DNA of 63,254 nt, counting the filler, from Pelomyxa schiedti (lineage: Eukaryota > Protista > Evosea): the NCBI GenBank assembly GCA_020536535.1. It is 6 parts of 6 records of this genome, joined end to end, with 100 filler letters (N's around TTAATTAATTAA, not from the genome) between each part and the next. Parts side by side here need not be neighbours in the genome. Positions count along the whole stretch, not along the records: positions 37,028 to 63,254 come from JAHLWZ010000500.1; 5 more parts are not named here. One strand, given 5' to 3'. Positions within the stretch are counted from its first letter, which is position 1; each line of letters starts with the position of its first letter. The notes under the pieces are model-generated. The model worked only from the letters and a program-made list of their open reading frames with translations. It searched no databases and had not been told where the DNA came from. The position numbers and the translations under genes were made by a program. This document shows positions 37,687 to 61,299 of this stretch, in pieces.

Positions 37687-38240
37687 TTATACTAGCTCTT
37701 CAGACCACGTTGCCTCAACTGGCATTGCGCCAGTGCAGGTTGCCTGAGCTGTGATGATGGTGGAAGCAAATTTCAGTTTGAAGGTCAACTGAGGGCGTTT
37801 GTTGAAGGGCTGCCCAACCCCAGGAATGTTTTTCACTTCCAAACAGCCGGGTACCTTGTGCACCCCAGGGTCATCAGGATAGCGTACATTGCGGCTCTTT
37901 GACCTGTAAATCTCGAACTTCGCAGAGTCTTGTGTGGAGCTACCTGGGGAAAACGGGAAAGATACTTCGGCGTCAACTGCAATGGTGTCTCCACACCGCA
38001 CGAATACGTGAAGAACGTCACATTGCCTCTGCCCATCAATTTCAAATGTGGGCCTGCCTGGGTGTCGAGGAGCAACCTCTATTGTCGACACAGCGTAGGT
38101 GTAAGGCATGCATCTCTTTGTTATACACAGCGGATGTTCACCAAATATAACAGCTCCTTCCAAGACAGATGACAAAGGAAAGTTCGGGTTACACACCTTC
38201 CTCTCTGGAGTTTGAAGGGCCGTTGTCATGATTCTGCGGA
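37687..38240 (-). CDS. HSPA12-like Hsp70, gene A, C-terminal part (end of NBD plus beta-sandwich domain)
   Basis: SVLEGAVIFG..ITKRCMPYTY...F.P....QDSAKFEIYRS...FASTII; 38120-38240 is identical to 42342-42462. Confidence 0.88.
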
Positions 38241-38466
38241 NNNNNNNNNNNNNNNNNNNNNNNNNNNNNNNNNNNNNNNNNNNNNNNNNNNNNNNNNNNN
38301 NNNNNNNNNNNNNNNNNNNNNNNNNNNNNNNNNNNNNNNNTTTTACGAAAGGGGGTTCACCATCACTGGGACTGGAATAAAGTGATGTGGGAAAAAGTAG
38401 TGAAGTGGGGGAGAATTCTCTTTTATACCCATTCTTGGTCAACAGGCACCAGTAATTACTTCGCTA

Positions 38467-41400
38467 TCAGGATTGTGCCAAGAACACAAAGGCTTTCTGG
38501 TGGGCAAAACGAGGGATAACACAGAACTCCACTCTGCCAGGAAAAGGCCTTTGCTGGTATTGTAAGTATTAGAAAGATCATAACATGGACGAGAGCACAC
38601 CGTGGGAAAAACTTGCATGAAGTCCCTGTTAAATTGTTCTCCTGGCATGGGATAGCTGAATTCACAGGATGAGCACAGCAGGTAAATTTGTACGATGGCA
38701 ATGCAGGTTGTCCTGCAGGCTGGAAGGTTGAGTGACTGTTCCACACAAATCCCAAGTTCTTCATTGGTTTGAGCGTGTGCTGGCTTGGTGTCATTTCTCT
38801 CTTTCACAAGCTCCACACATTTGTCCCACATGTTTTTACATAGTATGGCTTGTTGCCTGGGATCTTTGCGTACAGAGGGCAGTACATCCAACGCGAAGTT
38901 GGTCAAGGTGGAATTAAAAAACTCCTTTGCCTGGATTATAACCTCATAGGCTGCTATAGAACCCGAGGCCCTAGATTTATTTGCCTTTTGAAGCTCAGCA
39001 GTTCCTGTGTTCTTTCTGGTTTTTATTGCACTTCGCACTTGCTCTTGAAGCATCATCGCATCTGTATTTTGCTTACATAATCCAACAATTGTGTTTGGTG
39101 AGTAGACTTTCTTGATGTTTCTGAGAACTGACTGCATTTCTTCAAGTTTTTGGGTCATGGTCTTGGTTGTGATTTCATCATCAGAACTAATCTGCTTCAG
39201 CTTGGACTCAACAGCTTCTACACTGTTGCCAAAGTTAATACTTGGATCACCGATTCTTTCAATCTGCCCCTGTGCCCACAATGAGAAAGCCATGGCTTTG
39301 GCCATGTAGTTGTGGAAGTTATCATTTGCAATCCCCCTGTTGAGACTCTTAGAAACTAAATGTCCTTTTTCAGTTTTCAGTGTATGAAGGTCATCTAATA
39401 ACTTCTTAACCTCCCGAAAGAGGTCTTGTGCCCTCTTTTTTCCAAAAAGACTAAGAAAGAGAAAAGTGATACAAATGAAACACACGTCAATATCACTGAA
39501 CTGAGCCTCCTTTAGCAAGGCAAACTGTGATTTGACGGATTTCCATTTATTGTGGTTTTCATTCTCCCAGTCCTTAACGACTTGAAGAAGCACTGCCTCC
39601 TGGGATAACAAGTTAAAACAAAAAGTCTTACAGTAAGACTACTTGAGCTTTAGCTTCTTGCAACGTAACAATATTAGCTGTTAAAGATGAGAGGCAACGT
39701 TGGCCCTTATTTGCCCAATCGAGTAGTGCTCTTGCAGTGGTAAAGAACTCTTTTTGTATACGGTCTGGTGTGGTTTGCCTTAAAAAACCGATTTGCAATT
39801 TTGGTGATAGGATCATAACCATACTTTTCCAATTCGGCACTTATAACTTGAAAGTAGCTGTACTCCAGTATTTCCATTTTCAACCAGGTACTTTCAATTT
39901 GCTTGGAACAGTGCAATGGAGGTTGGCGGTGTAATTGAGATTGAGCTTGTGTGATATCCCTTTCCAAATCAGCAATTTTCTCCTTTTGTGTTTGTTTGTG
40001 TCTCTTTGTTGCAAGGTAAATTGTATGCTTCCAATGCACCTCTTGAGCAGAACGAAGAGTATTGTCAAATTTTGGCGGGATTTTGAAGAACTTCATCTCT
40101 TTGCACACCCAGGCCTCAAGCTTTTTTTTTTTTTTTGTTAAGTAACAATAACTTTTTAATGATGATGGCCAATTTACCTCACAAGAGTTTTGGAAATTAG
40201 AGACAATCGCAGTCAAATAATTAACAGTGGGGTCTGATTCCAGTTTCAGATTGGCAACATGTGATTGCAAACTTGTAGCTTTTGAAGTTAACTGAGGATC
40301 CCATAAGGATGAAAAGAGTTTCAGCCCCAAATCTGGGTCTTCTGAGAGCCCACAAAACGCGTCTCTCTTTCTCATAAGATCTTGTTCAAGATCATTCGAA
40401 TCTCTAATTAGCTGCAGTTCTGTTTGGTGTCTCACTTTGATAGCTTCTACTCTTTTCTGAAGTCGTGACTGCTCCTGTCTGGCTGCCTCTATTTCCCGAC
40501 AAAGTACAGAAGTACTGAGTATTTCAGCAGGCATAGGGGCTGTACTGAATTTCAGTTTATCCACAGACATATCAAGAACTTCCGCACAACTACTTGTCAC
40601 TTTTTCAATTCCGGTTTCATATGACTTTTGTGTGCAATCAGAGAGCCTCTTTTCTAATTCAAGAGGCTCCTTTTCTGCCCACGCTTTAAAGTTAACTGTC
40701 CTGCCAAGAAGACGCAGTGTATTTCCCATTGCAGCCAGACTTGAATTCACCTCCTCCAGCTTGAGCGTGATCCCCTTGTTTCGTAATATTACATGGAAAT
40801 GGAATTTGCGTTTCAGTTACCAGCATATCATGGTAATTCTGACTCTCCAACTCTTGCTTCTGTAAAGACAATCTTTGGTATGTTGGATGTCTTTTACGGT
40901 ACTCCACCTCTAGTACTTTGACTGCCTCCTGTCTCAACAAAAAAAAAGAAAAGAAAAGGGTACAGAGGGAAGTGAACAGTAAGGTGTAGAAAGGGAGACC
41001 CGATACTATTGTTTACCTGTATATTATTGGAAGAAGAAGAGGCAAGCTTCTTAGAGGAGCTTGTAAACCAGCTAAGAAATGCATTGGTTTCTTTTAAGAA
41101 TATTTGCTGGTTTTCCTGGTTTTGTCTTTGCCTTTTCTCTTCATTATGAAGCAGAGTTGCATATCGTACTTCAGATTTTGTCATCTCATTCCAACTGTTC
41201 TCCATCACATCAGCCCTTTTCCTAAGCTGTGCAGAAAGTTGTGGGCAACCACCCTTCGAAAACTCTTGATGCAATGTATAGAGGCTACTTTGAAGTTGTT
41301 TTCGTTCCACATCTTTCCCAGATTTTTCTGCAGTGAAGCAATCTCTCTTGTTTATGAGAGACTGAATTCCAGTGAGAGTGTTATCATAATCTGTTCCTTT

Positions 41401-43606
41401 CTGGAAATATTGTGTCCAGTGTTGAATCCATCCAATAACCTGCAATATTGTCAGGAGTTAAAAAAACGGACTTGGTGAAGGATGTGGCAGCAATACAACC
41501 TTTTCCATGGATTTATGTGCATTCATTGCTTTGCCACACAGGAGGAGTGTTTCAGTGAATTTTGTCATCCATTGATCAGCGGCAGTCACTCGTGCCTTGG
41601 AAGCAGAATGTCGAAGCTTGTTCAGTTGTTCGTGGAGTGAGTGCAAATCAGATCGAAATGACGATGTAATTTGTTGGAGGTTCATGTCAGGCCGACTGGT
41701 GAGAATTTCAAACTCCTCGTATTTGCCTTGGAGCTTGCATTCAAGTTCTTTGTAATCCTTGGAAGACTGATACTCCGTCACATATTTTTGTTGCATGGAA
41801 TCGACTTTTTTACAAAAGGATTCATGCCCCTCATTCGCTGACTTCATTTCCAAAGAGATTAAATCTGTTGGTTCCGCCTTGAGCAATTCAAAGATTTCTG
41901 CTATTTCATTCAACTTCTTCTTTGATTCGGCGATGACCTCGGAACAACTTCTCTCCGCAAATTCTATGTCCGCTTCAACCTGCTTCTCATGGTGACGGAT
42001 CCTTTCTTCCAATTCTGAAGTTTCCCTCTGAATCCAAGCAGCAAACTGTGTTGTGCCTTCACGAAATTGCAGGGTTTTCTTCAACTGAGGAAAGTTTGCA
42101 CAAACAGCCTGATAAGTGGACTCGACTTTCTACGGAGGAAGTGAATCAAAAATACATAGACAAAAACAAATAAAAACATGCCTTGACACCTGGAAAACCT
42201 CCAACCGGACGCCGCTTTGACATTTCTTGGAAGAGTATTGTTAAAGAGTCCATTGTGCTAATCTAGAATGGATTGGATCAAAAGGCCACCATTCGCCAAT
42301 TGAAACTCACCTCCCCATGTGTGTCTGTCATGCGTCTCTTCGTTATACACAGCGGATGTTCACCAAATATAACAGCTCCTTCCAAGACAGATGACAAAGG
42401 AAAGTTCGGGTTACACACCTTCCTCTCTGGAGTTTGAAGGGCCGTTGTCATGATTCTGCGGAAGACTTCACAACGGCTGAGTCCACCAACGAGGTAAATT
42501 GCGCCGACGCGCACATCGCCAAGGTTGGGGATGATGTTGTTCAAGATGTGGTCGCTCGCGCGAGTCGCCTGCTCGACAATTTTATTCGTGAAAACGGATG
42601 CGTCCAGCCTGAGTCTGCTTGCTTGATAAGATTGGATCAAGGGGCTGTTGAAGTCAGAAATAAGACTGGCGAGCTTCGGCTTGCCCATTGCTTTGAGCGC
42701 GTCGTAGATGCAGCTCGCAGAGGCATTGATCCTTGTGGTAAGTGCATTCACACTGAGCTTCGCTGACTCGATTTCATCTTCCAGTTCGAGCCAATTGAGA
42801 TCCGCCTTCGCTCTTTCCAAGACATCGGAACCGAACACCTGTTGAAGAAAGCCAATGACAGTCTCGTTTACATAAGTGGACCCCCACGCACCGCCGCTGG
42901 GAGGATACAGTTCAACGAGTTCCGTTTCAGTCTCGCACTTGTGAACACCGATATCAACAGTGCCTCCCCCAGCATCCACGATGATGTAAGTGGATCCGAC
43001 TTCGAGCCCCAGGCTGTGTTTTATTGCAACCGAGGCCGCCTCGGGCTCCAAAGCGAGTGTAACGTCTTGAAGTCCGGCATTGGATGCGCATCTGACCATG
43101 AAAGACTTCGCGCCCTGGTCCCATATCGCTGGTACAGTCAGTATCCACTTGACGTTAGCCACCGTGGTTATGAATTCTCTGTTCATGTGTCCCAGCGCCA
43201 TTCCGACGATGTATTTTAAGACCCTGGAGATAACCAGTTCCAGGGGAAGGTGCACTTCTGGTTTGTTCACACATTCTATTTCGCGTGTGGCCGACGTTCC
43301 ATATATAAGTATCCTGAAGTTCCTGAAGTAATAAACTTCTTCGACTTGTGTGGGGTCTAAATTTTGCATGAAAACCCTTGCCTCCCGTCCGAACTTGATG
43401 GCTTCGTGTGGTTCCGTTGCATTAAGCACAACTTCGGTGGGTACTTTTTGTTGTCCTGATACCGTCTCAGGCCACTCGGCAAACACGATCTGCCCACTTC
43501 TGTTTCGTGCGTCACGAAAGGCGTAGCCACTGCACGCGGAACCCAAGTCAATGGCGCAACACACTGGTCGATCAACCGCTGAGGACTCCACGACAGCTGT
43601 ACACAT
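38467..43606 (-). CDS. Gene B: HSPA12-like ATPase domain + spectrin (alpha-actinin-type) repeats + C-terminal GrpE/Mieap-like domain
   Basis: Intronless NBD (AIDLGS, WILTVPAIW, ALEPEAA, VDAGGGTVD, SGGAWGS, VGGLS). A GTGAGT donor after ..TDTHGE splices in frame to W-containing helical repeats (LEAW..F...FDNTL..W..ME..Y...EL). The last exon encodes QRPFPGRVEFCVIPRFAHQKAFV. The gene model is hand-predicted. Confidence 0.8.
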
Positions 43607-44897: not shown

Positions 44898-47800
44898 TCA
44901 GGATTGTGCCAAGAACACAAAGGCTTTCTGGTGGGCAAAACGAGGGATAACACAAAATTCCACGCTTCCAGGACGTGGATTTTGCTGTTAGAGCAAGTGT
45001 TAGCAAAAAAAAAAGGGCCAGCCACAAAGAGTTCTGGAGCACACCGTGGGAAACACTTGCATTGTGTCCTTGTTAAACAGTTCTCCTGGCATGGGGTAGC
45101 TGATTTCACTGGATGGCGAGCACAACAAGTAGATTTTTGCCGTAGCAATGCATGTGTTTCTGCAGGTATCAATTGGAAGGTTGAGGGACTGTGCAACAGT
45201 AATCCCAATTTCTTCAGTGCTTTGCGGGCGTTCTGGATTGGTGTCACTTCCCTCTTTCACAAGCTCCACACATTTGTCCCACATGTTTTTACATAGTATG
45301 GCTTGTTGCCTGGGATCTTTGCATACAGAGGGCAGTATGTCCAACGCGAAGTTGGTAAATGTTGCATTAAAAAACTCCTTTGCCTGGATTATAATCTCAT
45401 AGGGGGGGGTCAAAGGAGGGATAGAAGGGAGAGTTGTAGGAGGAGTATGCTGAGTTGGAGAGAAATTAGGTGCTGAAGTTGCAGATGGAGCAACTGGTGC
45501 CCTTGATGCAGATAGCCCTGGGCATGGCTCAGTGTGTCCACCAAGTCGTTGATATTCAGCCCTCAAGGCGTCATAACTTTGATGCAGAGATACAAGTTCT
45601 TGCTTGTATCTGCTGGTTTCTTCTTCATTTGCAGGTTGAATAATGCCCTATTAGTTTAGTTCAAATTAGGTGAAAATGATAAATCAGGTATAAAATGAAG
45701 GCTGGACCTTGGTTGGGCATTCAAGCATCTTATTCACGAATATCAGTGAGGATCTTAAATTCCACATGTCTTTGGAAGACTGGAAAGCTGTTATATTTTT
45801 ACTGGCATGGCTTATTTGTACCAGTTCTGTTATATTATTTGTCTGCGCAATGAAGTTCTTATTTAGTTTGATGTGTCCGTCAATAGCCTTCAAAAGAGCT
45901 AGATTTCTGTTTTCTATCCCATTTACTATGGCCATACTTTGTTGTTCTATGGAATCTGCAGTTAAGAGGCATTCAGTGGGTGCAATATGCATCTCATTTA
46001 TGAGAGCCCACTGCTTTTCAATGGCTTGCTTCCTCTCCTGCAATTGCTGCATTAATTCCTTCTTCTCTCTCTCTAGCTCTTCTTTGAGTCTCAGCAGCTC
46101 TTCTATACTACTATTCCTAAACATAGAAGCCCGCATGATCATGCACTTTGATTGTACCCACAGTACAAAGTTGAGGGCTGCAATATTTAAATCACCTAGA
46201 ATCTGCTCCTTTCTCTCCTCATTCCGTAGTGCAGCTTCCAATTTTTCTTTTTTGGTTTTTTTGTAATCGATAAGAGATTGCCATAGTCGAAGCATATCCG
46301 CAAAACCCGTTTGTATTTTCTGGAGGGTAAATAATGTGTAAGTACTGAATAAAATGTGGGATTGTTGTAACACAAACCGGGGAATCGAAAAAGTCGTTTG
46401 TGAGTAAATAAGTGGCATACTCCAAGAGGCATCGTAACGAAATCTCTTTGTTGATTCGCTCATTGCACTTCCAGAACTCAATAATCTGGTTTAATACAAA
46501 TGAGTGCCCAGAAGACCTATCAAATAGCAGCTACTCCTCCGGTCTACAAACCTGCACTTGGGCACCATGTAACGTGCTGACTGGGTCGAGTCTTGTGAGT
46601 GTGCCTTTGATCTCAGCACATGCAGCTTGGTGCTTTTTCATTTCTTTTGTGAATTTCTTCTCAACATCATCAAGTTTTCTTTGTCTGTTAAGGAAGTTCT
46701 TTTTGTGAGGCTATAATAAAAAGGATACACTTGTACCTTTCTAGTTCTGCTCCGAGTTTTGCAAAGTGTTCTTGCTCCGTAGTCTCCATCTCTGCCCATA
46801 GTTCTTCGACCACTGTGGGTTTGGATCTATCTGGAATATCAAATGACAGATGTGACAGTGATGTAAAGTAGGCATTCAGTTGAGACTTCTCTTCAGATTT
46901 ATGGATTTTTATTGTGATGTGCTGACTGTACACTTCTTCCAATTTTTGAGCACCTGATAATGTGTTGTCAAATTTAGCCCCCCTAAGCAACTTTAGCTCT
47001 GCTTTTATCCAGTCAATAACCTGGTATTAGCGGAAAAAATGAGACTAAAGAATTACAGATAAAAACGAATACCTTTGATGACAAGGAGCAGTATTCTGTT
47101 TGAATTTCCGTCTGCACACTATTTTTCAGCTGAAGGAATTTATTAGACAGTGAGTTGCTCTTTGCCTCAACTTCTCTACTTATGGTTTCTGTCTTCTTTG
47201 TGCTTGCTTGAATTCCAGTGTGCTGAGTATCCAATAAGTTTAGTTGTTTTTGGAAATCATCCAATTGTGTTCTCCATTTTTGGGCTTTCTTAACAAGGTC
47301 ACAGTGTGAGGACTCTGATGAGAATATTTTCTGATACTCCAAAAGAAGGTTCTCCAGCTTTGCTGCCTCCATTGAAAATAATCGGAACTTGTTTGCCAGT
47401 TGGAGCTCGGCGTCACCATTGCTCTTTCTTGTTTCCATTGCACTCTTTAGCTGTCCCTGGAGTTGTTCCACTTGGAGCCTTTGTTTACATAATTCATCAA
47501 TGGTGCGTGGTGGATAGACTGTCTTGATATTATTGAAATCCAATTGCATATCTTCAAGTTTTTTTGTCATCTCTGTGGCTGTCATTTCATCAAAGGAGCT
47601 AATCTGGTGCAACTTGGATTCAATGGCCTCTACCCCAGTTCCAAAGTTGAGACTTGACTCCCTAATGATCTCCATCTTTCCACGGACCCACTCAACAAAT
47701 GCAAAAGCTTTTGCCATATAGTTGTTGAAGTCATCTTTTGCAGTACCCTGTCTGAGATTTTTGGAAACTAGACGTCCCTTTTCATGTTGAAGTGCGTCAA

Positions 47801-50800
47801 GCTCATTGAGCAACTTGTCAACCTCCTTTAAAGTGTCATCTACCCTCTTTTTACCCATGAAAGTAAGAAGGTGAAAAGGAGAGGAAATTACACACCGCAA
47901 TATTTATGAAAGAACCACTCTTTAGCAGTGAAAAGTGTGAGTGTATTAGTGACAACTTGCTCTGGTTTTCAGTTTCCTCTTTTTGAACCCGAAGAAGCAT
48001 AGCCTCCTGGATAGGGTAAAGAAAAATGAAACACCAATGGAACAAACCTGATCTCTTGCATCTTTCAAAGTAGCCACGTCAGCTGTTATAGTTTGGAGAG
48101 CACTTTTACTCTTCTTTCCCCAATCAGATAGTGCCATAGCAGTGCCAAAGAATTCGCGTTGCTTATTGTCTAGGTTTGTTTGCCTTAAACGATTCGATTT
48201 ACAAAAAATTGATCGAAAGGAAAGTAGCCATTGCATACCGGGCCAATTCTGTGGTGATACTTTGAAAGTAGGCATTCTCCAGCTTTTCCATTTTTAACCA
48301 GACACTGTCAATTTGCTGTGAACACAGCAAAGGAGGGGAGTAGTGGAATTTCTCTTGGGCTTTTATGATAGACTTTTCTAAACCCACATAATTCTCCTTT
48401 AGTGTTTGTTTTGATCCCTTTATTGCCAGGTAGTCCTTGTGCTTCGCGTGTAATATTTGAACACAATAGAGTGTGTTGTCAAATATTGGTGCGATTTTGA
48501 AGAATTTGATCTTCTCAGACATCCAGGCCTCAAGCTTTTTTTTTTTTTTTTTTGGAAAAAGATGTATGGGTAATTTTGTCATTAAATGCTTATAGATGGC
48601 ACACTTCAGTAGACTTTTGTATATTAGAGACAACATCTGCCAAATAACGTGCCAATGCTGGGGCTGTCTTACTTTGGCACTTGGATGCAAGTGATTGCAA
48701 ACTTTTAGCTTTTGTATCTAATTGAGGCTCCCACAATTGTGAAATACGTCCGAGTTCTGTATCTTCTGTGAGCTTACAGAAGGTTTCTTTCTTTCTCATA
48801 AGTTCTTGTTCAAGCTCAGAAGAATCTCTGATAAACTGTAACTCTGTTTCGTATCTCTTTTGGATTGGTTCAACCCTTTTAGGTAATAATGTTTGCTCAA
48901 GTTTTACTTTCTCCATCTCCTGAGAAAGGGTAGTCATGGGCAGGGCCATTGGCTTGGCCAGAAATGTCTCATAGATTTGTTTCAGTTTATCACCAGAAGT
49001 GTCAAGGACTTGTGCACAACTATTTCTAACTTTCTCTATGCCACTATCATATGACTTATTGGTGCAATCAGAGAGCCTCTTTTCCAGCTCAACAGGTTCC
49101 TTTATTGCCCATACTTTGAAGTCAACTACCCCAATGAGGAACCGTAGTGCATTCCCCAATGCATCCATAGCTGCCTTCACCTCTTCCAGTTTGGATACAA
49201 CCAGCTTGTTTGTAAAAGTGACATTCAATGCAAATTGCATTTAGGTTACCTGTATATCATGATAATCCTGATGGGTCAAATCTTGTTTCTGCAAAGACAA
49301 ACCCTGTAAGGCAGGAAACTTTTTCCGGTATTCAGTTTGGATCACCTTGAGGGCATCCAGCTGTCTTGGCCAAAAAATGGCAGAGGTAAAGGTGAGATAA
49401 GGAAGGGGAGACATAACAGTGGTTGTCTAACCTGGGCTTCAAGTGACCCAGAAGGGGAGAGCCCAGAGGATTTTTTGCTCCAGGAGAGCAGAGCACTGGC
49501 GTCTTTGAAGAAAGTGCATTGTGTCGCGTCGATTTGTTTTTGCCTGTTCACTTGAAATGAGAAGGAAACCTTGTTTTGGAAATAAACCTTTCGATCTCTT
49601 GTTCCATTTGGGTAGTATATCCTCCTTCATATTTTATCATCTCATTCCAATTGTTCTCCATCACATCAGCCCTTTTCCTAAGCTGTGCAGAAAGTTGTGG
49701 GCAACCACCGTTCAAAAACTCTTGATGCAATGCATAGAGGCTACTTTGAAGTCGTTTTCGTTCCACATCTTTCCCAGATTTTTCTGCAGTGAACCCATCT
49801 CTCTTTTTTCTGAGAAACTGAATTCCAGTGAGAGTGTTATCATAATCTGTTCCTTTCTGGAAATATTGTGTCCAGTGTTGAATCCATCCAATAACCTGCA
49901 ATATTAACAGGAGTTAAAAAAACAAATTTGACAATGGTCCAACCTTTTCCATGGATTGGTGTGCATTCATTGCTTTGTCACACAGGAGGAGTGTTTCAGT
50001 GAATTTTGTTATCCATCGATCAGCGGCAGTCACTCGTGCCTTGGAAGCAGAATGTCGAAGCTTGTTCAGTTGTTCGTGGAGTGAGTGCAAATCAGATCGA
50101 AATGACGATGTAATTTGTTGGAGGTTCATGTCAGGCTGACTGGTGAGAATTTCAAACTCCTTGTATTTGCCTTGGAGCTTGCATTCAAGTTCTTTGCAAT
50201 CCTTGGAAGACTGATACCCCGTCACATATTTTTGTTGCATGGAATCGACTTTTTTACAAAAGGATCCATGCCCCTCATTCGCTGACTTCATTTCCAAAGC
50301 GATTATGTCTGTTGGTTCCGCCTTGAGCAACTCAAAGATTTCTGCTATTTCATTCAACTTCTTCTTTGATTCGGCGATGACCTCAGAACAACTTCTCTCC
50401 GCAAATTCTATGTCCGCTTCAACCTGCTTCTCATGGTGACGGATCCTTTCTTCCAATTCTGAAGTTTCCCTCTGAATCCAAGCAGCAAACTGTGTTGTGC
50501 CTTCACGAAATTGCAGGGTTTTCTTCAACTGAGAAAAGTTTGCACAAACAGCCTGATAAGTGGACTCGACTTTCTGTGGGAGGTAGGATTTAAGAAGAAA
50601 GAAGGACAAAGTAAAAGCATGCCACAATATCTGGAAACGATTCACTCTGAAGCTGATTCACCTTTTCCTGCAAGACAGGTATGACTAAAGACTCCTTAGT
50701 CTCAATCTAAAGTGGATTAGGGCCAGGGAGTTACGAGTTTTCAACTGAAATCAACCTCAGATGACACTTTACCCAAAGGTTCTGATGTTGATGTCCAGAT

Positions 50801-51829
50801 TTTTTCAAGAGATACTTTTTTGCACCACTCCCGAATCTTGTCTGCCATTTGGAAGAATTCTTTTTGGACCTCAACAAGTTGCTGTTGCCTTGTAGATAGT
50901 TTGAAAAAAGAAGGTTTGGAGGGAAGAAAGAAAACCTGGTCAAAATCTGGGAGTAATTTGCTTCCAGTGTTACCATGTTGACCCAACTTTCCTCAATGCT
51001 CTCTAAACGGCAAACTTCACATCTGGGGTACTTTGCTACTATTTCTGAAAGAGAAGCCACAAGCTGTTGTTTCAAGGCCTCCTTTTCACTTTCTCTCTTT
51101 GGTTTCTCCTTCAGGTATTTTGCATACTTACTGCATCGAAGCATTATTCCTTCAATAGTATTGGTGGTTGTTTCTGGTTTTGTTTGAAAATCCAACAGGT
51201 ATTCTTTCACCCATAGTGCAATCTTGAAATGATAGTGAAAATTTTATAATCACGGAAAAAAAAAACAGGCTCACGTCATCAGCTTTTGTGTTAAAGCTTT
51301 TCATTTCTTGCATATCTTTGACACATAGTGATATTTGGTCCTTCATTTTTACCGAAGTTTCTGATGCATCACCACAAGGAGTTTTCAGTTTATTCAGCTT
51401 GTCTTCTAGGACTGTCAAAGTTGCGGCTCGGCTTTTCAGAGACTCTAAATCTGTTATTTGTCCCAACTGTGGTCCTGGCGGCTCTGTCATTAATGAGAAG
51501 GTGTGGTCAATGTCCGTTCCTTCCTTGGTTATGTAGTCACTGACTTGTTGCAGTGCTTGAAAATATAGGGTTGTTTGAGCCGGATTAGCCGCCTTGGTTT
51601 TTGCTACTTCTTCCAAGGAGGCAATCTTTTCAGAAGTTAGGTGGAAACGCGAGAGAGAACGCACAATTGGCGCCAGGTGGTCACAATTCTCGATAGTTCT
51701 AGAAGTTATTTGCTGCAGGACATACATAGGGTCCTGCTGTGAACTAGAAAACTTAAAACCACAATGAAATTGCAATTTTGGCACACCTAAAATATACGCC
51801 CATTGCCATTCACTCTGGCCCTACCGAAT
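44898..51829 (-). CDS. Gene C: long spectrin-repeat protein with C-terminal GrpE/Mieap-like domain (5' end unresolved)
   Basis: Multi-exon paralog of gene B with extra repeats. It ends YEIIIQAKEFFN..NFALDILP..MWDKC..SYPMPGELFNKDTMQVFPT|QNPRPGSVEFCVIPRFAHQKAFV. Confidence 0.8.
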
Positions 51830-51929
51830 NNNNNNNNNNNNNNNNNNNNNNNNNNNNNNNNNNNNNNNNNNNNNNNNNNNNNNNNNNNNNNNNNNNNNNN
51901 NNNNNNNNNNNNNNNNNNNNNNNNNNNNN

Positions 51930-52378
51930 GCCACCGTGGTTATGAATTCTCTGTTCATGTGTCCCAGCGCCATTCCGACGATGTATTTTAAGACCCTGGA
52001 GATAACCAGTTCCAGGGGAAGGTGCACTTCTGGTTTGTTCACACATTCTAGTTCGCGTGTGGCCGAAGTTCCATACAGATGCATCTTGAGCCTGTTGAAG
52101 TAAAGAACTGTGTCGACTTGTGTGGGGTCTAAATTTCGCATGAAAACCCTTGCCTCCTGTCCGAACTTGATGACTTCGTGTGGTTCCGTTGCATTAAGCA
52201 CAATCTCGGTGGGTGCTTTTGGCAGTCTACCAAATCCGAGAGCCGTCTCGGGCCAGTCGGGAAATACGATCTGACCGCTCCGATTGCGTGAATCACGGAA
52301 CGCGTAGCCTGTACATGCGGTACCAAAGTCTATAGCACAACGCACGTGTCGATCAGCAACTGGCGGCGCCGCAGCCAT
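51930..52378 (-). CDS. HSPA12-like Hsp70 N-terminus (probably the 5' part of gene A)
   Basis: CAIDFGTACTGYAF, KAPTEIVL, FGQEA and LKMHLY motifs; 51930-52050 is identical to 43158-43278. Confidence 0.88.
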
Positions 52379-52522
52379 CGGGTGAAAAAAAAACAAACGC
52401 AGTTAGTTCAGCTGAATCAACTGGTGATTTAGCACTTGCCGGACCTGCCCAACTTGGGGGATGGGCCCGTTTTGGGACACAACCAAAACTACAAAAACCA
52501 AAAAAGAAAACCACGAAGCTAC

Positions 52523-54063
52523 ATGGCGTACGTGCGTCTCCCAGAGTACAAAAAGGTGTGTTGTGCAATCGACTTCGGCACGTGGGGCACCGGATTTGCA
52601 TTTAGGGATTTTCTTGTACCCGGGACGACGCGTTATAGTACATGGCCACTGACAGACTCACCGAAAACACTCACGGAGGCACTCGTCGGGATTCAACCAC
52701 CTCACAAACTGAAGAGTTTCGGTTGTCAAGCAAGAGACGACCTGACCCGAATGACCCAAGCAGAAAGGGACCAGGTGATGCACTTCAAGCAGTTCAAAAT
52801 GCAACTCGCAGGAGAGGGCGACCGAAACTGGATGGTGAAAGACAACGAATACCCCGATCGCACAATCAACTTCAAGTTGCTCACAACGCGGTGCATAGAA
52901 TACGTGTGCGGGGTGGCGATGACTCAGATCAGCGCACAGTTCAGCACCGTCACCCCAGAACAAATACAATGGGTTCTTACCGTGCCGGCAATTTGGGACC
53001 AAGCGGCGAGGCGACTGATGTTGGATGCGGCTGAGGATGCGGGGCTCTTTGGTGTCATGATTGCTCTGGAACCTGAGGGGGCTTCTCTTGCCATAAGAGC
53101 AGACTTGCTTGATCTGCAAGTTGGAACCACTTATTTGATAGTGGACGCAGGGGGTGGTACCGTCGATATAACACTACATAGATGCACAAGTAACACCGAA
53201 ATATGTGAACTGTATCCCCCTTCTGGAGGTCCATGGGGATCTGCATCAGTCAACACTGGAGTCATTTCCTTCTTGAAAGATATTTTTGATCCAGATGGAG
53301 ATGTGTTTCCCCATGCAAAAAAAACTGAGTGGTATCAACTGGAAGATGATATTGAGTCACTCAAGCTTTTTGCCCGCGATACAGACGGAAGCACCGCCCC
53401 TATGAATTTCGATGCTTCCGTGATATATGGTGCTCTGCAAACTTTGGGCAAGCCAGAATTTTCAACCTTTGTTGATTCGTACAATACTTCTCCCACCAAA
53501 TCAACCCCGCCAATAGTAGTCTACCGTGAAAGTTCATTGAGACTCCCGACGTGTATCTTTACCAACATCATAAAACAAAAAGCACTGGCAACAAGTTCAC
53601 ACATTATAACCCATATTCTTCCAGAGATTACTGAGACCGTAAAAGTGTTCCTTGTTGGTGGATTCTCAAGAAGCGAGATTTTCAGAGATATCATCAAAAA
53701 AGAGCTCTCGCCTCTTCCTGTGAGTTGGCCCCACTTTCCAATCACTGCTGTCATGCAAGGGGCCGTTGAATTTGGAATCAATCCCATGTCGATCAACAAG
53801 CGATGCGTTCCATACACTTACGCCGTGCTCACTTCAGATTTGGCAGTGAACCACCCCGGAAGGCTTGCGTTTTGGACGGAGCAAGGCGAGAAGCGGTGCC
53901 ACGTGCTCAAGACCTTTGTGAAGAGCAAGGATATCATCAATGTCGAAGAGGTGATCCGGCATACCTTTTGCCCAATGACTCCACAACAAGAAAGCGTTGC
54001 GTTTACGATATACAAATCAAAGAAGAGAGAAATCACTTACCCGGAGGAGAACGGAGTCATCAT
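52523..54063 (+). CDS. Gene F: HSPA12-like Hsp70 with intact ATPase motifs, cut by a gap; probably continues into the vWA tail at 59675-59934
   Basis: AIDFGT, FKMQL, WVLTVPAIW, ALEPEGA, VDAGGGTVD, IESLK and VGGFS motifs; intronless. Confidence 0.92.
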
Positions 54064-54264
54064 NNNNNNNNNNNNNNNNNNNNNNNNNNNNNNNNNNNNN
54101 NNNNNNNNNNNNNNNNNNNNNNNNNNNNNNNNNNNNNNNNNNNNNNNNNNNNNNNNNNNNNNNTTTCCAGCCAGAACAAACACCCTTCGATTAATCACGC
54201 TCCTGTGCTGTTTTGATAGTCTAGCCCACAAGGGGACACATTTTCCTTTCGTGCCCACCACTTC

Positions 54265-54389
54265 CTGAAGTACTTCAGACAGCCGCCCCTTGGGGCGGCT
54301 GTTTTGCACATGGTTTTGATAGGACAGCCGCCCAAAAAAAAGGGGCGGCTGTTTTTACAGGAATTTGACAGGCCAAAAAACAGCCGCCC
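54265..54389. repeat. Cluster of inverted repeats (five ACAGCCGCCC copies in alternating orientation plus a 14-bp palindrome)
   Basis: ctgaagtacttcag; acagccgcccc-tt-ggggcggctgt; acagccgccc-a8g-gggcggctgt; a further copy at 54380. Confidence 0.85.
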
Positions 54390-54591
54390 TTTGATCCAGA
54401 TATGCATTCCACAGATATCTCTCGTTAAAGTTACCAAGTACTTGCTTGAAATAACAAAAGTCAGACTTTTTAATTTCCATAAACCACGTTGGAGTCCAGC
54501 AGCACCCAACTCACCGTCGAGGATATGCTGAATGTTGCTGTCAATGCCCCCACTTTTTCAGACTCTTTCCAATTTCAGGAATACTAACTAC

Positions 54592-56901
54592 ATGGCGCAC
54601 GTGCGTCTCCGAGAGGACAAAAAGGTGTGTTGCGCCGTCGAAATTGGCACGTGGGGCACTGGCTTCGCATTTAGGGATTTCGCTCGCACCATACCTACGC
54701 AATACGGCACATGGACACTGACAGACGCACCGAAAACACTCACGGAGGCACTCGTCGGGGTTCAACCACCTCACAAACTGAAGAGTTTCGGTTTTCAAGC
54801 AAGAGACGACCTGACCCGAATGACCCAAGAAGAAAGAGACCAGGTGATGCACTTCAAGCAGTTCAAAATGCAACTCGCAGGAGAGGGCGACCGAAACTGG
54901 ATGGTGAAAGACAACGAATACCCCGATCGCACAATCAACTTCAAGTTGCTCACAACGCGGTGCATAGAATACGTGTGCGGGGTGGCGATGACTCAGATCA
55001 GCGCACAGTTCAGCACCGTCACCCCAGAACAAATACAATGGGTTCTTACCGTGCCGGCAATTTGGGACCAAGCGGCGAGGCGACTGATGTTGGATGCGGC
55101 TGAGGATGCGGGGCTCTTTGGTGTCATGATTGCTCTGGAACCTGAGGGGGCTTCTCTTGCCATAAGAGCAGACTTGCTTGATCTGCAAGTTGGAACCACT
55201 TATTTGATAGTGGACGCAGGGAGTTATAGTATTGATATAACAGCACATAAATGCACAAGTGACACCGAAATATGTGAACTGTATCCCCCTTCTGGAGGTC
55301 CATGGGGATCTGAATCCATCACCACTGGAGTCATTTCCTTCTTGAAAGATATTTTTGATCCAGATGGAGATGTGTTTCCCCACATAGAAAAAAATGATTG
55401 GTATCAACTGGAAGATGATTTAGATACCCTGATGCTTCTTGCCCATGAGGGCCCCACCACTATGAATTTCGATACTTCCGTGATATATGGTGCTCTGGAG
55501 ACTTTGGGCAAGCCAGAATTTGCAACCTTTGTTGATTCATACAATTCCTCCCCCAAGAGATCAACACCACCCATACAGGTTTATCGTGAAGGTTCATTGA
55601 GACTCCCGACGTGTATCTTTACCAACCCCATAAGACAGAAAGCACTGGCAACAATTTCACACATTATAAACCGTATTCTACCAGAGATTACTGAGCCTGT
55701 AAAGGTGTTCCTTGTTGGAGGATTGTCACGAAGTGAGATATTCAGAGATATCATCAAAAAAGAGCTCGCACCTCTTCCTGTGAGTTGGCCCCACTTTCCA
55801 CTCACTGCTGTCATGCAAGGGGCCGTTGAATTTGGAATCAATCCCATGTCGATCAACAAGCGATGCGCTCCATACACTTATGCCGTGCTCACTTCAGATT
55901 TGGCGGTGAACCACCCCGGAAAGCTTGCATTTTGGACGGAGCAAGGCGAGAAACGGTGTCACGTGCTCAAGACCTTTGTGAAGAGCAAGGATATCATCAA
56001 TATCGAAGAGGTGATCCGGCATACCTTTTGCCCAATGACTCCACAACAAGAAAGCGTTGCGTTTACGATATACAAATCAAAGAAGAGAGAAATCACTTAC
56101 CCGGAGGAGAACGGAGTCATCATGGTGAAAGGTGGACTGACACTCAACAACGTGCCAAACCGCGGCAGACCGGTCAGTGAGAGAGAAGTTGTTGTCACAC
56201 TCAATTTTGGATCGACTGTGATTGCCGTTGATGTTGCACATGGCTCCCCCGCTTCCGCTCCCGATGCCGCTGCTGCTCGCCCTGCGACCTCTGTGAAGTG
56301 GATTGAAAGTATATCGTCCGTTTCGGAGGAGCAACTTCACTACCACATCGTGTTCTGTTTGGATGAGTCGGGATCCATGTGCGGCGATCCGTGGCGCGAA
56401 GTGAGCGAAGCAGTTGATGCGTTCGTCAAGTGCAGACTCCAAAAGTGCCCAACCGGAGACACCACATCCGTTGTGACATATAATCACGCTGCTCGACAGA
56501 GGCACAGTGGCCCACTTTCGTCTTTGGCTCCTGGAATTTTGGGAACAAACTCTGGTGGTGGAAAGTGCTTTGCAGTCGCGTTGAGTTTATGTGATCGAGT
56601 GCTGATGGCCACACGTGCTGAAAGCTGTTCAGGTGGAAGAACACCGATTTTGTTGTTCATGTCCGACGGCCAGTGTGACAATGGTCTGCAACAAATGAAG
56701 GATGTGCATGCTCACCACAAAGACAGTGGGCTGAAGATCTTTGTTGTTGGGTTTGGTGCCGGCGTCAACACTGCACAACTCGAAGCGCTTGCTGCTGCCG
56801 TGTGTGGTTCTTATTCTGTTGGGAAGAATGGTGCCGAACTGGTCAACACTTTCACCCACATCTCATCAGGGTTATCGTCCTTTCTCAAACACAATTGTTG
56901 A
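54592..56901 (+). CDS. Gene G: HSPA12-like Hsp70 with degenerate nucleotide-binding motifs, fused to a C-terminal vWA domain
   Basis: Intronless 769-aa ORF and paralog of F. The vWA domain starts at ~56341: IVFCLDESGSM...LLFMSDG...IFVVGFG. Confidence 0.93.
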   Translation: MAHVRLREDKKVCCAVEIGTWGTGFAFRDFARTIPTQYGTWTLTDAPKTLTEALVGVQPPHKLKSFGFQARDDLTRMTQEERDQVMHFKQFKMQLAGEGDRNWMVKDNEYPDRTINFKLLTTRCIEYVCGVAMTQISAQFSTVTPEQIQWVLTVPAIWDQAARRLMLDAAEDAGLFGVMIALEPEGASLAIRADLLDLQVGTTYLIVDAGSYSIDITAHKCTSDTEICELYPPSGGPWGSESITTGVISFLKDIFDPDGDVFPHIEKNDWYQLEDDLDTLMLLAHEGPTTMNFDTSVIYGALETLGKPEFATFVDSYNSSPKRSTPPIQVYREGSLRLPTCIFTNPIRQKALATISHIINRILPEITEPVKVFLVGGLSRSEIFRDIIKKELAPLPVSWPHFPLTAVMQGAVEFGINPMSINKRCAPYTYAVLTSDLAVNHPGKLAFWTEQGEKRCHVLKTFVKSKDIINIEEVIRHTFCPMTPQQESVAFTIYKSKKREITYPEENGVIMVKGGLTLNNVPNRGRPVSEREVVVTLNFGSTVIAVDVAHGSPASAPDAAAARPATSVKWIESISSVSEEQLHYHIVFCLDESGSMCGDPWREVSEAVDAFVKCRLQKCPTGDTTSVVTYNHAARQRHSGPLSSLAPGILGTNSGGGKCFAVALSLCDRVLMATRAESCSGGRTPILLFMSDGQCDNGLQQMKDVHAHHKDSGLKIFVVGFGAGVNTAQLEALAAAVCGSYSVGKNGAELVNTFTHISSGLSSFLKHNC

Positions 56902-57220
56902 GTGAGCTTTGTTGTGTAAAAAAAATCCATTATCCTTTCTGACTAATTTTCTTACTACTTACAAACCCAGTGCAAAATGCCAGGAAGGAAGGGGAAATTG
57001 AAAAAAAAAATCTTTCCTTGTGTTTGTGTCACCAAACTTCCAGCGTGGTGTGGTTGTGCAGGGCGATTCGCCATGGCAACCATCGACTAGTCTTGGTAAA
57101 TCTGGTAAATAATATCCAAAGTCTTGGTATGTGGATGAAGGTCTCCATGTGGAATATGAGGTCTTTATCTTGCAAGTATTATGAATATTACAAAACTATT
57201 TGGTCATTATCTTACTCAGT

Positions 57221-58037
57221 TTAATCTTCCAGTAATCCAACAGCTTTGGCCTGTCGATTTTGGTTGTAATAAAAAGCCGGCAGTATATAAAAATCCACTT
57301 TTCCTTTCATTTTGTTTTGCTATCGCATTTAGTCAAAAATTGGCAAGAAGAAAAAACACACTGCTGGAAAAACTTCAATATCGTTTATTGTCAAGCTATC
57401 TGGTTCACAGTAGGAATATTCATCTGGTGACACCAAAGTATGCACACAGATATTTAACATAGAGCAACATATTTCCTGTATCTTGGCACTTTTAGGGAGA
57501 TCAGACAGCTCAAGCATTTCATGGCAAAGATTTTCAAGAACTTCTGTGGTGACTGGAGTACCAGCTGGAGACTGATAGTCCACAATATGCCTGCTGCAGT
57601 TGAAGCACAGGCCCCACATTTTTTTGCACATCATAGCCTGGTTTCTAATGTTACAATCAATCTGTGGAAGTTCATCAAGAACCAAGTTCACGAACATCTT
57701 GAAGAAAACAAAAATTAGTCCCACACTTGCTAAATGTATGTACATTTCTGAAGTCCTTGTACCACAAGAAAATCTCATATTGTGGAACATGGGACACAGA
57801 GTATTTCAAGTGAGCTACCGTTACACTTTGAGCCGTGGCGCAGTGCTTACGAGGTGGTTGCACTCTGGGCTTTTTGCGGTGGTGGTGATGATGGTGATGG
57901 TGGTGATGGTGCTTGTGGCTGTGGGCCGTGGGTGTCGCCGTCGGTGCCGGTTCGGAACCCGTATTTGTTTGTTTAACACCGAAGTGCTCGCTTGTTGCAC
58001 TGTCCTCATCAGGGGCTTTGTGAAAGCAAGAACCCAT
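57221..58037 (-). CDS. Gene D: small N-acylation-motif (MGSC), His-rich protein with GrpE/Mieap-like domain
   Basis: Three exons: ..YEIFLWYKDFRN|MFVNLVLDELP..QAMMCKKMW..IEVFPA|QNKMKGKVDFYILPAFYYNQNRQAKAV. Intron positions are shared with E and with B/C. Confidence 0.8.
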
Positions 58038-58137
58038 CTACTGGTCCAGTTCGAAAGGAAAAAAAGGGGCTTCCGGTCCGTTGATGAAGTCCTGTCCCAT
58101 CAAAGAACAATTTGGTAAAAAAAACAAGCAAGCAAGT

Positions 58138-59574
58138 ATGGAGCAGGAGTTGAACTGCATTACTTTGACCCTTCGTGGTGTTCTCTACACGCAGCAGAAA
58201 ACCCTCAATTTGGTGCAGTCTATGATAACGTGGAATAGAAACGAATGCGACAGGCAACTATCCGAGATCGCGTCGCTTTTGGCCACCACCTCCGGTCACA
58301 TCTCGGCCTTCGAAAACGAGTTCACATTTCTACGCAGACAGGCACCAGTTAACACTTCGTCGGCAGCCTCTTCTTCAGCTTCCCCCCCACAACACAAGGT
58401 AGTAACCGTTCCTATTGCTCCTGATTCAGCACAACACAGAGCAATACCACCAGACACACCGGCAACGCCCCCGTTAACAGCACCATCAACGGTACAAGCT
58501 GCTTTGCCTCCTCCTCCAGATTCCCGTTTCGGTTCTCCTGTCGGAACAAATGCTCCCAGTACTGCCGTTGGGGAGAAACACAATCATACACAGCATACAC
58601 CTTCAATTCCAGTTCCACGCAAGGTTCAGGGTACAACAGCTCAGCCAAGAAATACAGGTGGCTCAAGTCAACTGGTACCAGGACAAGCTGGATCAAGAAT
58701 ATGTTCTGCCAGTGCTATGAGGATTGCACAGAGTAGTCATTTAAATACAGAGCCCCCAAGGCGATCCTCTCCGACCGTACCAATACCACACGGTCCCTCA
58801 GTGTCATCACGTATGCAAACAAGCTCCCACCAGCCTTCACATCACAAGCACCCTGTTTCAAGTACTCAAGAAAACAAACTGCAACCGCAACCGCAGCAAC
58901 AACTGCAACAGCCGACACAACAACAACTGCAACAGCAGACACAACAACAACCGCACTTTGTTCCAAGTACTCAAGAAAACAAACTGCAACCGCAACAACA
59001 ACCACAATCGCCCATGCCACAAATATCAAATTCACTGTCACAACGAATTAGCGTGTGGCGCGCGGCTCCGCATTATGAACTTCTAATTTTGTTGAAACAA
59101 TTTAAAAATGTAAAAAGCCACTTCAACCTCTGTAATGACCAAAAGTAGGACTTGACGAACTTTGTATTGGATACTCTCCCCAATGCAAACTTTAAGACGC
59201 CAGAGCAGCAAGCACAAATATTGCATGAGATGTGGAAATTTCTTGCTGAAAGAGTCTCCCAAATCTTACAGCAGCAGAACCCTGGAGTTCAAGATCCTGA
59301 GAACGTTATTACCGAAGCCATTAACAGTTTGATCACTTGGTTGAAACCAATTGGACAAGAGAAAACTATTTGTGGACTATGTGAAGTGATGGTCAAACTA
59401 TGCTTTGCCACCATTGGCAAGCCAGAGTATGGATTTGTATTCTTGGAGCCAAAAACACCCTTTATTCCATCACAGATGGATGTGTTTCCCAGCTTGCAGG
59501 CACCACCCCAATCTGGGATTGTTTCACTGTGTGTTATACCAGGCCTCACATATGGTAAGACCATCCAAGCACGT
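58138..59574 (+). CDS. Gene E: short coiled coil + P/Q/S-rich linker + GrpE/Mieap-like domain (end in gap)
   Basis: YELLILLKQFKN|DLTNFVLDTLP..QQAQILHEMW..FVFLEPKTPFIPSQMDVFP..GIVSLCVIPGLTYGKTIQAR. Confidence 0.82.
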
Positions 59575-59674
59575 NNNNNNNNNNNNNNNNNNNNNNNNNN
59601 NNNNNNNNNNNNNNNNNNNNNNNNNNNNNNNNNNNNNNNNNNNNNNNNNNNNNNNNNNNNNNNNNNNNNNNNNN

Positions 59675-59934
59675 CACCGATTTTGTTGTTCATGTCCGAC
59701 GGCCAGTGTGACAATGGTCTGCAACAAATGAAGGATGTGCATGCTCACCACAAAGACAGTGGGCTGAAGATCTTTGTTGTTGGGTTTGGTGCCGGTGTCA
59801 ACACTGCACAACTCGAAGCGCTTGCTGCTGCCGTGTGTGGTTCTTATTCTGTTGGGAAGAATGGTGCCGAACTGGTCAACACTTTCACCCACATCTCATC
59901 AGGGTTATCATCCTTTCTCAAACACAATTGTTGA
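59675..59934 (+). CDS. vWA C-terminal tail, second copy (probably the 3' end of gene F)
   Basis: Near-identical to 56642-56901, with two synonymous changes and a different downstream flank. Confidence 0.8.
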
Positions 59935-61217: not shown

Positions 61218-61299
61218 GCTTTGTTCTACTGTCCTTTTGGAGTAGCTAAGCTTGATCTGATGAGTATTGTTTCTGGTGCCAACCACCTTGGTTACCCTC

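What the first reader, a model, noticed from the sequence alone, without database searches (positions are those of the whole stretch)
37687..59934. Clustered Hsp70(HSPA12-like)/GrpE-like/vWA/spectrin locus: candidate undescribed chaperone-switch system
Seen: within ~22 kb there are four HSPA12-like genes (A with its own beta-domain, B fused to spectrin repeats, F and G fused to vWA) and four genes sharing one ~150-aa domain (B, C, D, E). Two tight head-to-head pairs are present, and B fuses both modules in one chain. Known: GrpE is the nucleotide-exchange factor of DnaK-type Hsp70s, HSPA12 is an atypical Hsp70 branch, and functional clustering is uncommon in eukaryotes. Inference: fusion plus clustering suggests a dedicated atypical-Hsp70/exchange-factor pair coupled to vWA adaptors, a membrane-anchored partner (D) and long rods (B, C). 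It could be a membrane/cytoskeletal remodelling or host-defence/symbiont-control module. I know of no description of this combination.
Basis: partly seen in the sequence, partly recalled or inferred. Interest (0 to 1): 0.92.

Follow-up and report, generated by a model that had tools for sequence, protein, structure and literature searches.

The report
Ancient HSPA12 chaperone with GrpE-like partner
An amoeba gene cluster pairs a poorly understood Hsp70 relative (HSPA12) with a GrpE/Mieap-like protein domain; the same pair sits side by side in filamentous bacteria, ciliates, fungi and a coral, which points to a missing cofactor of HSPA12.

Summary
The piece is Pelomyxa schiedti scaffold JAHLWZ010000500.1. 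None of its four gaps joins true neighbours; the order is a scaffolding artefact. Linkage of G-D-E to the rest is unproven, and B's fusion is not seen in RNA. A second, ~49%-identical cluster with the same gene types lies elsewhere in the genome. The domain is homologous (profile probability 92%) to a protein encoded beside the HSPA12-like gene in 70 of 80 bacterial loci (69 directly downstream; one locus is a fusion). That bacterial domain folds like the GrpE head, and one member passes the Pfam MIEAP cut-off. The pair recurs in ciliates (one two-gene nanochromosome), two fungi and a coral, but many eukaryotic HSPA12 genes lack it. Best reading: an ancient dedicated HSPA12–MIEAP/GrpE-like switch. 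Binding and nucleotide exchange are inferred, not shown; a defence role is plausible only. I found no paper describing the pair.

The parts
51930..52378 (-). Gene A, 5' part (HSPA12-like nucleotide-binding domain, intact motifs)
   Evidence: RNA contigs carry this copy's letters at the positions matching 43279 and 43295
42342..43278 (-). Segment collapsed between genes A and B (middle of the nucleotide-binding domain)
   Evidence: Exact 121-base overlaps at both ends; contigs join 38119 to 42342
37687..38240 (-). Gene A, 3' part (end of NBD plus HSPA12-type C-terminal domain); A is 565 aa, one exon, transcribed
   Evidence: 54% identical to the A-like gene of the second cluster
38467..43606 (-). 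Gene B: HSPA12-like NBD without its C-terminal domain (43606-42311), spectrin-repeat rod, MIEAP/GrpE-like domain at the C-terminus; 1533-aa model with 10 introns
   Evidence: Open model, 9 GT-AG and 1 GC-AG intron of 43-88 nt; last intron spliced in RNA; fusion junction seen in DNA only
38467..38948 (-). Shared domain of B (two exons, intron 38554-38600)
44898..51727 (-). Gene C: long spectrin/alpha-actinin rod with the shared domain at the C-terminus (about 2000 aa; 5' end and exact introns uncertain; deposited model covers only 44898-49240)
52379..52522 (.). 144-bp divergent spacer of the A/F head-to-head pair
   Evidence: same arrangement in the second cluster
52523..54063 (+). Gene F, 5' part (HSPA12-like, intact motifs); with the collapsed segment and 59675-59934 it gives a 772-aa HSPA12-vWA protein
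54592..56901 (+). Gene G: HSPA12-like plus vWA, 769 aa; phosphate-loop motifs altered (D to E in phosphate-1; GGGT replaced in phosphate-2), likely weak or dead ATPase
56003..56762 (+). Segment collapsed between F and G (end of HSPA12 part and most of vWA)
   Evidence: Exact 121-base overlaps
59675..59934 (+). Second vWA C-terminus (3' end of F as re-threaded)
   Evidence: 99% identical to G's end; frame check
57221..58037 (-). Gene D: 242 aa, Gly2/Cys4 N-terminus (possible lipid anchor), His-rich linker, shared domain; exons 58037-57744, 57697-57362, 57319-57221
   Evidence: D-like gene with Gly2/Cys5 in the second cluster
58138..59574 (+). Gene E: helical N-terminus, Pro/Gln/Thr-rich linker, shared domain (59149-59574); end cut by the gap; upstream start at 58081 possible
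63134..63254 (+). 121-base overlap showing that this contig continues into gene C's 5' end (reverse complement of 51709-51829)

Best explanation
The locus is an expanded copy of an ancient two-part module: an HSPA12-type Hsp70 ATPase and its own partner, which ends in a GrpE-fold (MIEAP-like) head. Shown: the two gene types travel together from bacteria to eukaryotes, are fused in at least one bacterium, and the bacterial partner head resembles GrpE. Inferred: the head docks on the HSPA12 nucleotide-binding domain as GrpE does on DnaK and releases ADP, switching the ATPase. Inferred: the variable N-terminal part of the partner (coiled coil in bacteria, fungi and ciliates; spectrin rod in B and C; lipid-anchor motif in D; low-complexity linker in E) decides where the switch is thrown, so HSPA12 acts as a locally triggered switch, not a general folding chaperone. 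In Pelomyxa the module was duplicated into two clusters, gained vWA (likely a target-binding add-on) and spectrin rods, and each cluster keeps one catalytically altered copy (G here), probably a regulator or decoy. I put binding at about 0.75 and nucleotide exchange given binding at about 0.8.
For: Second Pelomyxa cluster with the same gene types and an A/F head-to-head pair followed by a rod gene. In 1.84 billion representatives the only real hits of the domain are two proteins of that cluster. Profile match to the bacterial partner: probability 92.4%, E 5e-7, 137 columns; core 86.9% with reversed and 30 shuffled controls under 1%. A bacteria-only profile ranks seven Pelomyxa domain stretches among the top 9 of 606. 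Partner in 70 of 80 bacterial loci, 69 directly downstream on the same strand, one fused. Bacterial partner model pLDDT 92: the top 11 Foldseek hits are all GrpE chains, probability 0.82-0.99; VIA Z 7.0 to GrpEL1 and 6.0 to E. coli GrpE. 10 of 79 members hit Pfam GrpE and 9 hit MIEAP, one above cut-off. Head-to-head pairs in ciliates, one on a telomere-to-telomere two-gene chromosome. Neighbours in Rhizodiscina and Rhizophagus. A MIEAP gene next to HSPA12 in a coral. Purifying selection between paralogs, dN/dS 0.27-0.47. A and the 3' end of B are transcribed.
Against: No binding or exchange assay, and no complex model could be run. The Pelomyxa domain's own model is weak in the beta part (pLDDT under 50) and finds no GrpE in the PDB; in the Atlas a GrpE cluster scores only TM 0.35/0.45. 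GrpE matches of the bacterial model are modest (E 2e-3 or weaker, TM about 0.35, Z under 8), and its helical part is a single-chain bundle, not GrpE's dimeric coiled coil. Many eukaryotic HSPA12 genes have no partner nearby (most ascomycete metagenome loci, a clam, a second coral locus, a fish). Direct comparison with the Rhizodiscina neighbour was negative, and Pelomyxa vs pooled eukaryote partners gave only 3%. The bacterial loci are the best 80 of 167 and include related strains.
Confidence: 0.6

Rival explanations
1. The pair binds, but as sensor and effector in a defence or conflict switch (guard/decoy logic) rather than through GrpE-style ADP release. The variable N-termini and vWA sense an invader or non-self, and the HSPA12 ATPase sets the threshold. 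This can overlap with the best explanation as its biological role.
For: Bacterial hosts are mostly multicellular (filamentous cyanobacteria, actinomycetes, Beggiatoa-like forms), the pattern of the conflict systems in PMC7159879. Variable extra neighbours: AAA+ ATPase, radical SAM, second Hsp70. Mosaic identity among Pelomyxa paralogs (75-100% tracts) and altered ATPase motifs in one copy per cluster. HSP70 and Mieap families both expanded in bivalves, 68 vs 4.4 and 53 vs 0.6 genes per species (PMC8382680). A transposon-like remnant lies in the cluster.
Against: No toxin or nuclease effector domain in the Pelomyxa clusters. No PADLOC match beyond coiled-coil noise. dN/dS below 1 overall. No infection or allele-diversity data.
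Confidence: 0.25
2. The module is a housekeeping membrane or organelle remodelling machine: rods and a lipid anchor bring an Hsp70-like ATPase to the cortex, vacuoles or symbiont-containing compartments, akin to what is reported for animal Mieap on mitochondria.
For: True spectrin/alpha-actinin repeats in B and C; Gly2/Cys motif in D and in the D-like gene of the second cluster; Mieap's reported role in mitochondrial quality control (PMC8382680).
Against: Rods, vWA and the anchor were seen only in Pelomyxa; the conserved core occurs in bacteria; patchy presence and gene conversion are unusual for housekeeping genes.
Confidence: 0.12
3. The cluster is only tandem duplication plus a scaffolding artefact, with no functional tie between the two gene types.
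For: All four gaps are false joins and two segments are collapsed; the RNA-guided scaffolder explains the order.
Against: Both gene types share single contigs (B with C; G with D and E); a second gap-free cluster exists; adjacency recurs in bacteria, ciliates, fungi and a coral.
Confidence: 0.03

Closest known systems
DnaK-GrpE (bacterial and mitochondrial Hsp70 with its nucleotide exchange factor)
   Same: Hsp70-type NBD encoded beside a protein ending in a helix plus small beta head of GrpE-like fold; operon order in bacteria.
   Different: The Hsp70 scores far below DnaK cut-offs and has an HSPA12-type C-terminus; no DnaJ seen in the clusters; the partner is below the GrpE cut-off, has a single-chain helical bundle and variable N-termini, and can be fused to the NBD.
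Animal HSPA12A/HSPA12B and the expanded bivalve HSPA12 families
   Same: Best named homologs (25-29% identity, E to 1e-39); the Pelomyxa clade groups near them.
   Different: No cofactor is described for them and their function is called unknown in PMC13580251; here they carry vWA or spectrin fusions and sit with a partner gene.
Mieap/SPATA18 (Pfam PF16026) and plant GIL1/IRKI C-terminal domain (PF24994)
   Same: Nearest named families by Atlas features (0.83, 0.84); a Nostoc partner passes the MIEAP cut-off; a coral MIEAP gene lies next to HSPA12.
   Different: The Pelomyxa copies do not hit either Pfam model; no searched paper links Mieap to HSPA12 or to bacterial operons.
HSP70+GrpE theme of the DO-GTPase/GAP1-N2 conflict systems (Kaur et al. 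2020, PMC7159879)
   Same: Specialised Hsp70 with a GrpE in operons of actinobacteria; second NBD-only Hsp70; proposed threshold switch.
   Different: Those are defined by DO-GTPase, GAP1 and FNIII proteins, often with DnaJ; none was seen in the Pelomyxa clusters or among the recurring bacterial neighbours scanned.
MoxR-vWA chaperone systems
   Same: ATPase coupled to a vWA adaptor.
   Different: The ATPase here is Hsp70-like and fused to the vWA, not an AAA+ MoxR.

Membership tests
HSPA12-like Hsp70 | Hsp70/actin-fold NBD motifs (phosphate-1, EPE, phosphate-2, adenosine) | tested here: met
   Intact in A, B, F; altered in G
HSPA12-like Hsp70 | Closest homologs and tree position with HSPA12A/B-like proteins rather than DnaK/Hsc70 | tested here: met
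   eight Pelomyxa copies form one clade (support 1.0) near animal HSPA12 at weak support (FastTree, imprecise root)
HSPA12-like Hsp70 | HSPA12-type C-terminal domain instead of canonical basket and lid | tested here: met
   Full-length alignment to HSPA12 homologs for G; A, F similar; absent in B
Canonical DnaK/Hsp70 system | Score at the DnaK family cut-off | tested here: not met
   G scores 15 bits against cut-offs of 648-822
Canonical DnaK/Hsp70 system | J-domain partner encoded with it | tested here: inconclusive
   None among Pelomyxa cluster genes or the recurring bacterial neighbours scanned; not every neighbour was scanned
GrpE (PF01025) | Pfam gathering score | tested here: not met
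   No hit for Pelomyxa copies; bacterial partners best E 1e-3, the Nostoc one 17.5 bits vs 25.8
GrpE (PF01025) | C-terminal helix plus small beta head fold | tested here: inconclusive
   Met for the bacterial homolog; the Pelomyxa model is too weak in that part
GrpE (PF01025) | Homodimer with long paired helices and two-chain four-helix bundle | not testable with these tools
   Monomer models only; the bacterial model shows a single-chain bundle
GrpE (PF01025) | Speeds ADP release from its Hsp70 | not testable with these tools
   Needs an assay
MIEAP domain (PF16026) | Pfam gathering score | tested here: inconclusive
   Not met directly; met by a homologous Nostoc partner, 29.3 vs 27 bits, linked by profile match
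Spectrin/alpha-actinin repeat rod | Repeats matching solved spectrin repeats | tested here: met
   (E 2.6e-8); single exon weakly hits alpha-actinin; Pfam Spectrin silent
vWA domain | Pfam VWA score and DxSxS metal-site motif | tested here: met
   43.3 bits vs 23.8; DxSxS present, third-site Thr replaced by Lys
DO-GTPase/GAP1-N2 conflict system | DO-GTPase, GAP1 and FNIII components | tested here: not met
   Not found in the Pelomyxa clusters or among the recurring bacterial neighbours scanned
Catalogued anti-phage systems (PADLOC 2.0) | Match to system models | tested here: not met
   Only weak coiled-coil matches

The most novel reading that the evidence does not exclude
HSPA12 and the MIEAP domain are the two halves of one ancient nucleotide switch, inherited from multicellular bacteria and used across eukaryotes for defence or non-self control. 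Human HSPA12A/B and Mieap/SPATA18 would be cognate partners, and their joint expansion in bivalves would have one cause.
Probability: 0.3. Interest if true: 0.95.

Novelty: new variant of a known kind. Interest (0 to 1): 0.86.

Why it matters
A 2026 review calls the function of HSPA12 unknown (PMC13580251), and no cofactor is known to me. Mieap's domain has no assigned biochemical activity that I could find, and bivalves expanded both families without a shared explanation. This locus and its relatives give one testable answer to all three: the MIEAP/GrpE-like domain is the cognate regulator of HSPA12-type ATPases. Small two-gene bacterial operons and a natural fusion protein make the test simple. 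It would also extend GrpE-type exchange to eukaryotic proteins outside the usual organellar GrpE system.

Tried and rejected
Reading the scaffold as continuous: rejected. A and B, or F and G, as alleles: rejected, since they diverge fully outside the shared segments (A/B) or show 75-90% tracts with dS 0.15 (F/G). Pfam on the Pelomyxa domain copies: nothing. Word-index homolog searches with the domain alignment and with the fungal neighbour: nothing. PDB sequence search with the domain profile: only chance helical hits. Fold searches with the Pelomyxa model: no GrpE. Direct profile match to the Rhizodiscina neighbour: negative; that link rests on Atlas neighbourhood and motif order. P0068 is a repeat-driven chance hit. 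Viral contigs: ten Hsp70 loci, none with the partner. Spliced or re-threaded models were never sent to a search tool; database searches were made exon by exon by reference, so a search with the joined B, C, D or E proteins was left out. Joins were made only inside local scripts for frame checks, B-vs-C comparison and the tree.
Full report
Source and assembly. The piece is scaffold JAHLWZ010000500.1 of Pelomyxa schiedti, GCA_020536535.1. In the part returned (44532-63254) the deposited annotation has only a partial C and a shortened G. The genome was assembled with SPAdes up to k=121 and scaffolded with an RNA-guided tool (PMC8887013). Contig ends at 38240, 51930, 54063 and 59675 each repeat an internal stretch for exactly 121 bases, and 63134-63254 is the reverse complement of 51709-51829. 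So no gap joins true neighbours. Two segments are collapsed between paralogs: 42342-43278 (A and B) and 56003-56762 (F and G). One further DNA-type run and two RNA runs hold contigs that join 38119 to 42342, and the RNA contigs carry the letters of the 51930-52378 copy. Gene A is therefore a real, transcribed 565-aa gene. F re-threads to an open 772-aa HSPA12-vWA frame; this join rests on overlaps and frame, not on reads. The likely true order is A (reverse), F, a transposon-like stretch, C, B. The contig with G, D and E is unplaced, and which vWA gene leads into D/E follows the assembler's choice.

Genes. A, B and F have intact NBD motifs; G has altered phosphate loops. B has an open 1533-aa model: NBD without its C-terminal domain, then spectrin repeats, then the shared domain, with ten introns of typical size. 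Its last intron is spliced in RNA, but the NBD-to-rod junction is seen only in DNA. A short unspliced NBD gene plus a separate rod gene remains possible. The rods are spectrin/alpha-actinin repeats. D (242 aa) begins with Gly2 and Cys4, a possible lipid anchor (inference). E is cut by the gap. The ~145-aa domain is alignable across B, C, D and E. Paralog pairs show patchwork identity, consistent with gene conversion, and dN/dS of 0.27-0.47.

A second cluster. The best homolog of G is another P. schiedti HSPA12-vWA protein, 49% identical, on a 134-kb scaffold. Its neighbours are an A-like gene head-to-head with it, a rod gene ending in the domain, two E-like genes, a D-like gene with Gly2/Cys5, another E-like gene, a second A-like gene and a degenerate NBD. 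A search of 1.84 billion representatives with the E domain found only two proteins of this cluster and one chance hit. Both gene types are thus found together in both places where I could detect them.

The pair is ancient. An HSPA12 alignment retrieved 80 bacterial loci, mostly filamentous cyanobacteria and actinomycetes. In 70 a related partner gene is present, in 69 directly downstream on the same strand; in Actinorhabdospora the two are fused. The Pelomyxa domain matches this partner over 137 columns at probability 92.4%, E 5e-7; reversed and shuffled controls stay under 1%. A profile built from bacteria alone places seven Pelomyxa domain stretches in the top nine of 606. In ciliate-code contigs the partner is head-to-head with the HSPA12-like gene in four cases; one, L174, is a complete two-gene nanochromosome with telomeres at both ends. 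Similar neighbours occur in Rhizodiscina (head-to-head), Rhizophagus and four intron-poor metagenome contigs of unknown origin; the fungal links are weaker. In the coral Desmophyllum the next gene carries Pfam MIEAP. The pairing is not universal: most ascomycete metagenome loci, a clam, another coral locus and a fish locus show no partner within the flank read.

What the domain is. Pfam finds nothing in the Pelomyxa copies. Atlas features put it beside unnamed ascomycete proteins (0.95), then GIL1/IRKI and MIEAP (0.84, 0.83). Its model (pLDDT 65) matches ascomycete models at TM 0.64-0.70 and a GrpE cluster at 0.35/0.45, but no GrpE in the PDB. The bacterial partner is clearer. One member passes the MIEAP cut-off, and ten hit GrpE below cut-off. 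Its model (pLDDT 92) is a helical bundle followed by a small beta head; the top eleven Foldseek hits are all GrpE chains, and VIA gives Z 7.0 to GrpEL1. These scores are modest. The domain is best called a MIEAP-like member of the GrpE fold, not a GrpE family member.

Mechanism. Shown: conserved adjacency, a bacterial fusion, a GrpE-like head in the bacterial homolog, purifying selection, expression of A and of B's 3' end. From established knowledge: GrpE's beta head contacts the DnaK NBD and opens it to release ADP. Inferred: the partner head does the same for its HSPA12 neighbour, while its variable N-terminus sets the place or trigger; vWA supplies target binding; G and the degenerate NBD of the second cluster are regulators or decoys. 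I give this 0.6. The biological role is open. Host range in multicellular bacteria, variable add-ons and dead copies fit a defence switch (compare PMC7159879). Rods and a lipid anchor fit membrane work.

Novelty. No searched paper holds both HSPA12 and Mieap. Searches joining Mieap with GrpE, HSPA12 with SPATA18 or GrpE, or the pair with bacterial operons gave nothing relevant by title and abstract. The library omits most subscription papers. A 2026 review calls HspA12 function unknown (PMC13580251). Bivalves expanded an HSP70 family and a Mieap family together, but the authors drew no molecular link (PMC8382680). Kaur et al. describe HSP70 plus GrpE only inside DO-GTPase systems, whose defining parts were not seen here. 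The mechanism is a variant of Hsp70 plus exchange factor; the HSPA12-MIEAP pairing and its reach appear undescribed.

Limits. Joined spliced models were not sent to search tools; exons were searched apart. The tree is a quick one with an imprecise root and supports no claim on direction of transfer.

Noticed in passing
window 60195-62219, minus strand: Broken reading frames with a DDE-transposase-like stretch (61497-61919, motif recalled from memory; no Pfam hit) and a long Gln/His/Thr-rich frame (60195-61373): probably a transposon remnant between F and C.
   Followed up: partly
window 43970-44710: About 700 bases between C and B with short frames, a 25-base copy of the domain exon (44422-44446 vs 45311-45335); looks like debris of another duplication.
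   Followed up: no
window 42524, 42719, 42734 (run X1): A contig with two other letters leaves the shared NBD segment at 42524 into sequence found in neither cluster: a possible further HSPA12 copy or allele.
   Followed up: partly
L001:5270-8009 and L003:10001-16883: The deposited 826-aa and 2074-aa proteins look like two and about four neighbouring genes merged by the annotation; the degenerate NBD there may or may not be truly fused to an E-like gene, as in B.
   Followed up: partly
L008-L087, cyanobacterial loci such as L010, L012, L046: The pair sits in a larger recurring operon: AAA+ ATPase, coiled-coil proteins, a second divergent Hsp70 and a radical-SAM protein; no PADLOC or NCBIfam name. 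A candidate undescribed bacterial system.
   Followed up: partly
Actinomycete loci such as L030, L043 (about 400-aa gene upstream of the Hsp70, 19 loci): A conserved upstream gene with no Pfam match makes a three-gene form of the operon.
   Followed up: partly
L056:6111-8408: Natural fusion of the HSPA12-like Hsp70 and its partner in Actinorhabdospora filicis; a good construct for structure work.
   Followed up: partly
L174 (3019 bp): Complete ciliate nanochromosome holding only the partner and the HSPA12-like gene, head-to-head.
   Followed up: yes
L148, L152, L158, L162: Intron-poor, AT-rich contigs of unknown origin with several HSPA12-like genes and one or two partner genes; L152 also has a poly(A) polymerase head-domain gene.
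   Followed up: partly
L007:441-5719: Four short repeat-rich coiled-coil genes beside the three Rhizophagus HSPA12-like genes.
   Followed up: no
window, G vs F codons 161-240: Nine amino-acid-changing and two silent differences in the tract that holds G's altered phosphate-2 loop; small numbers, but the only tract with dN above dS.
   Followed up: partly
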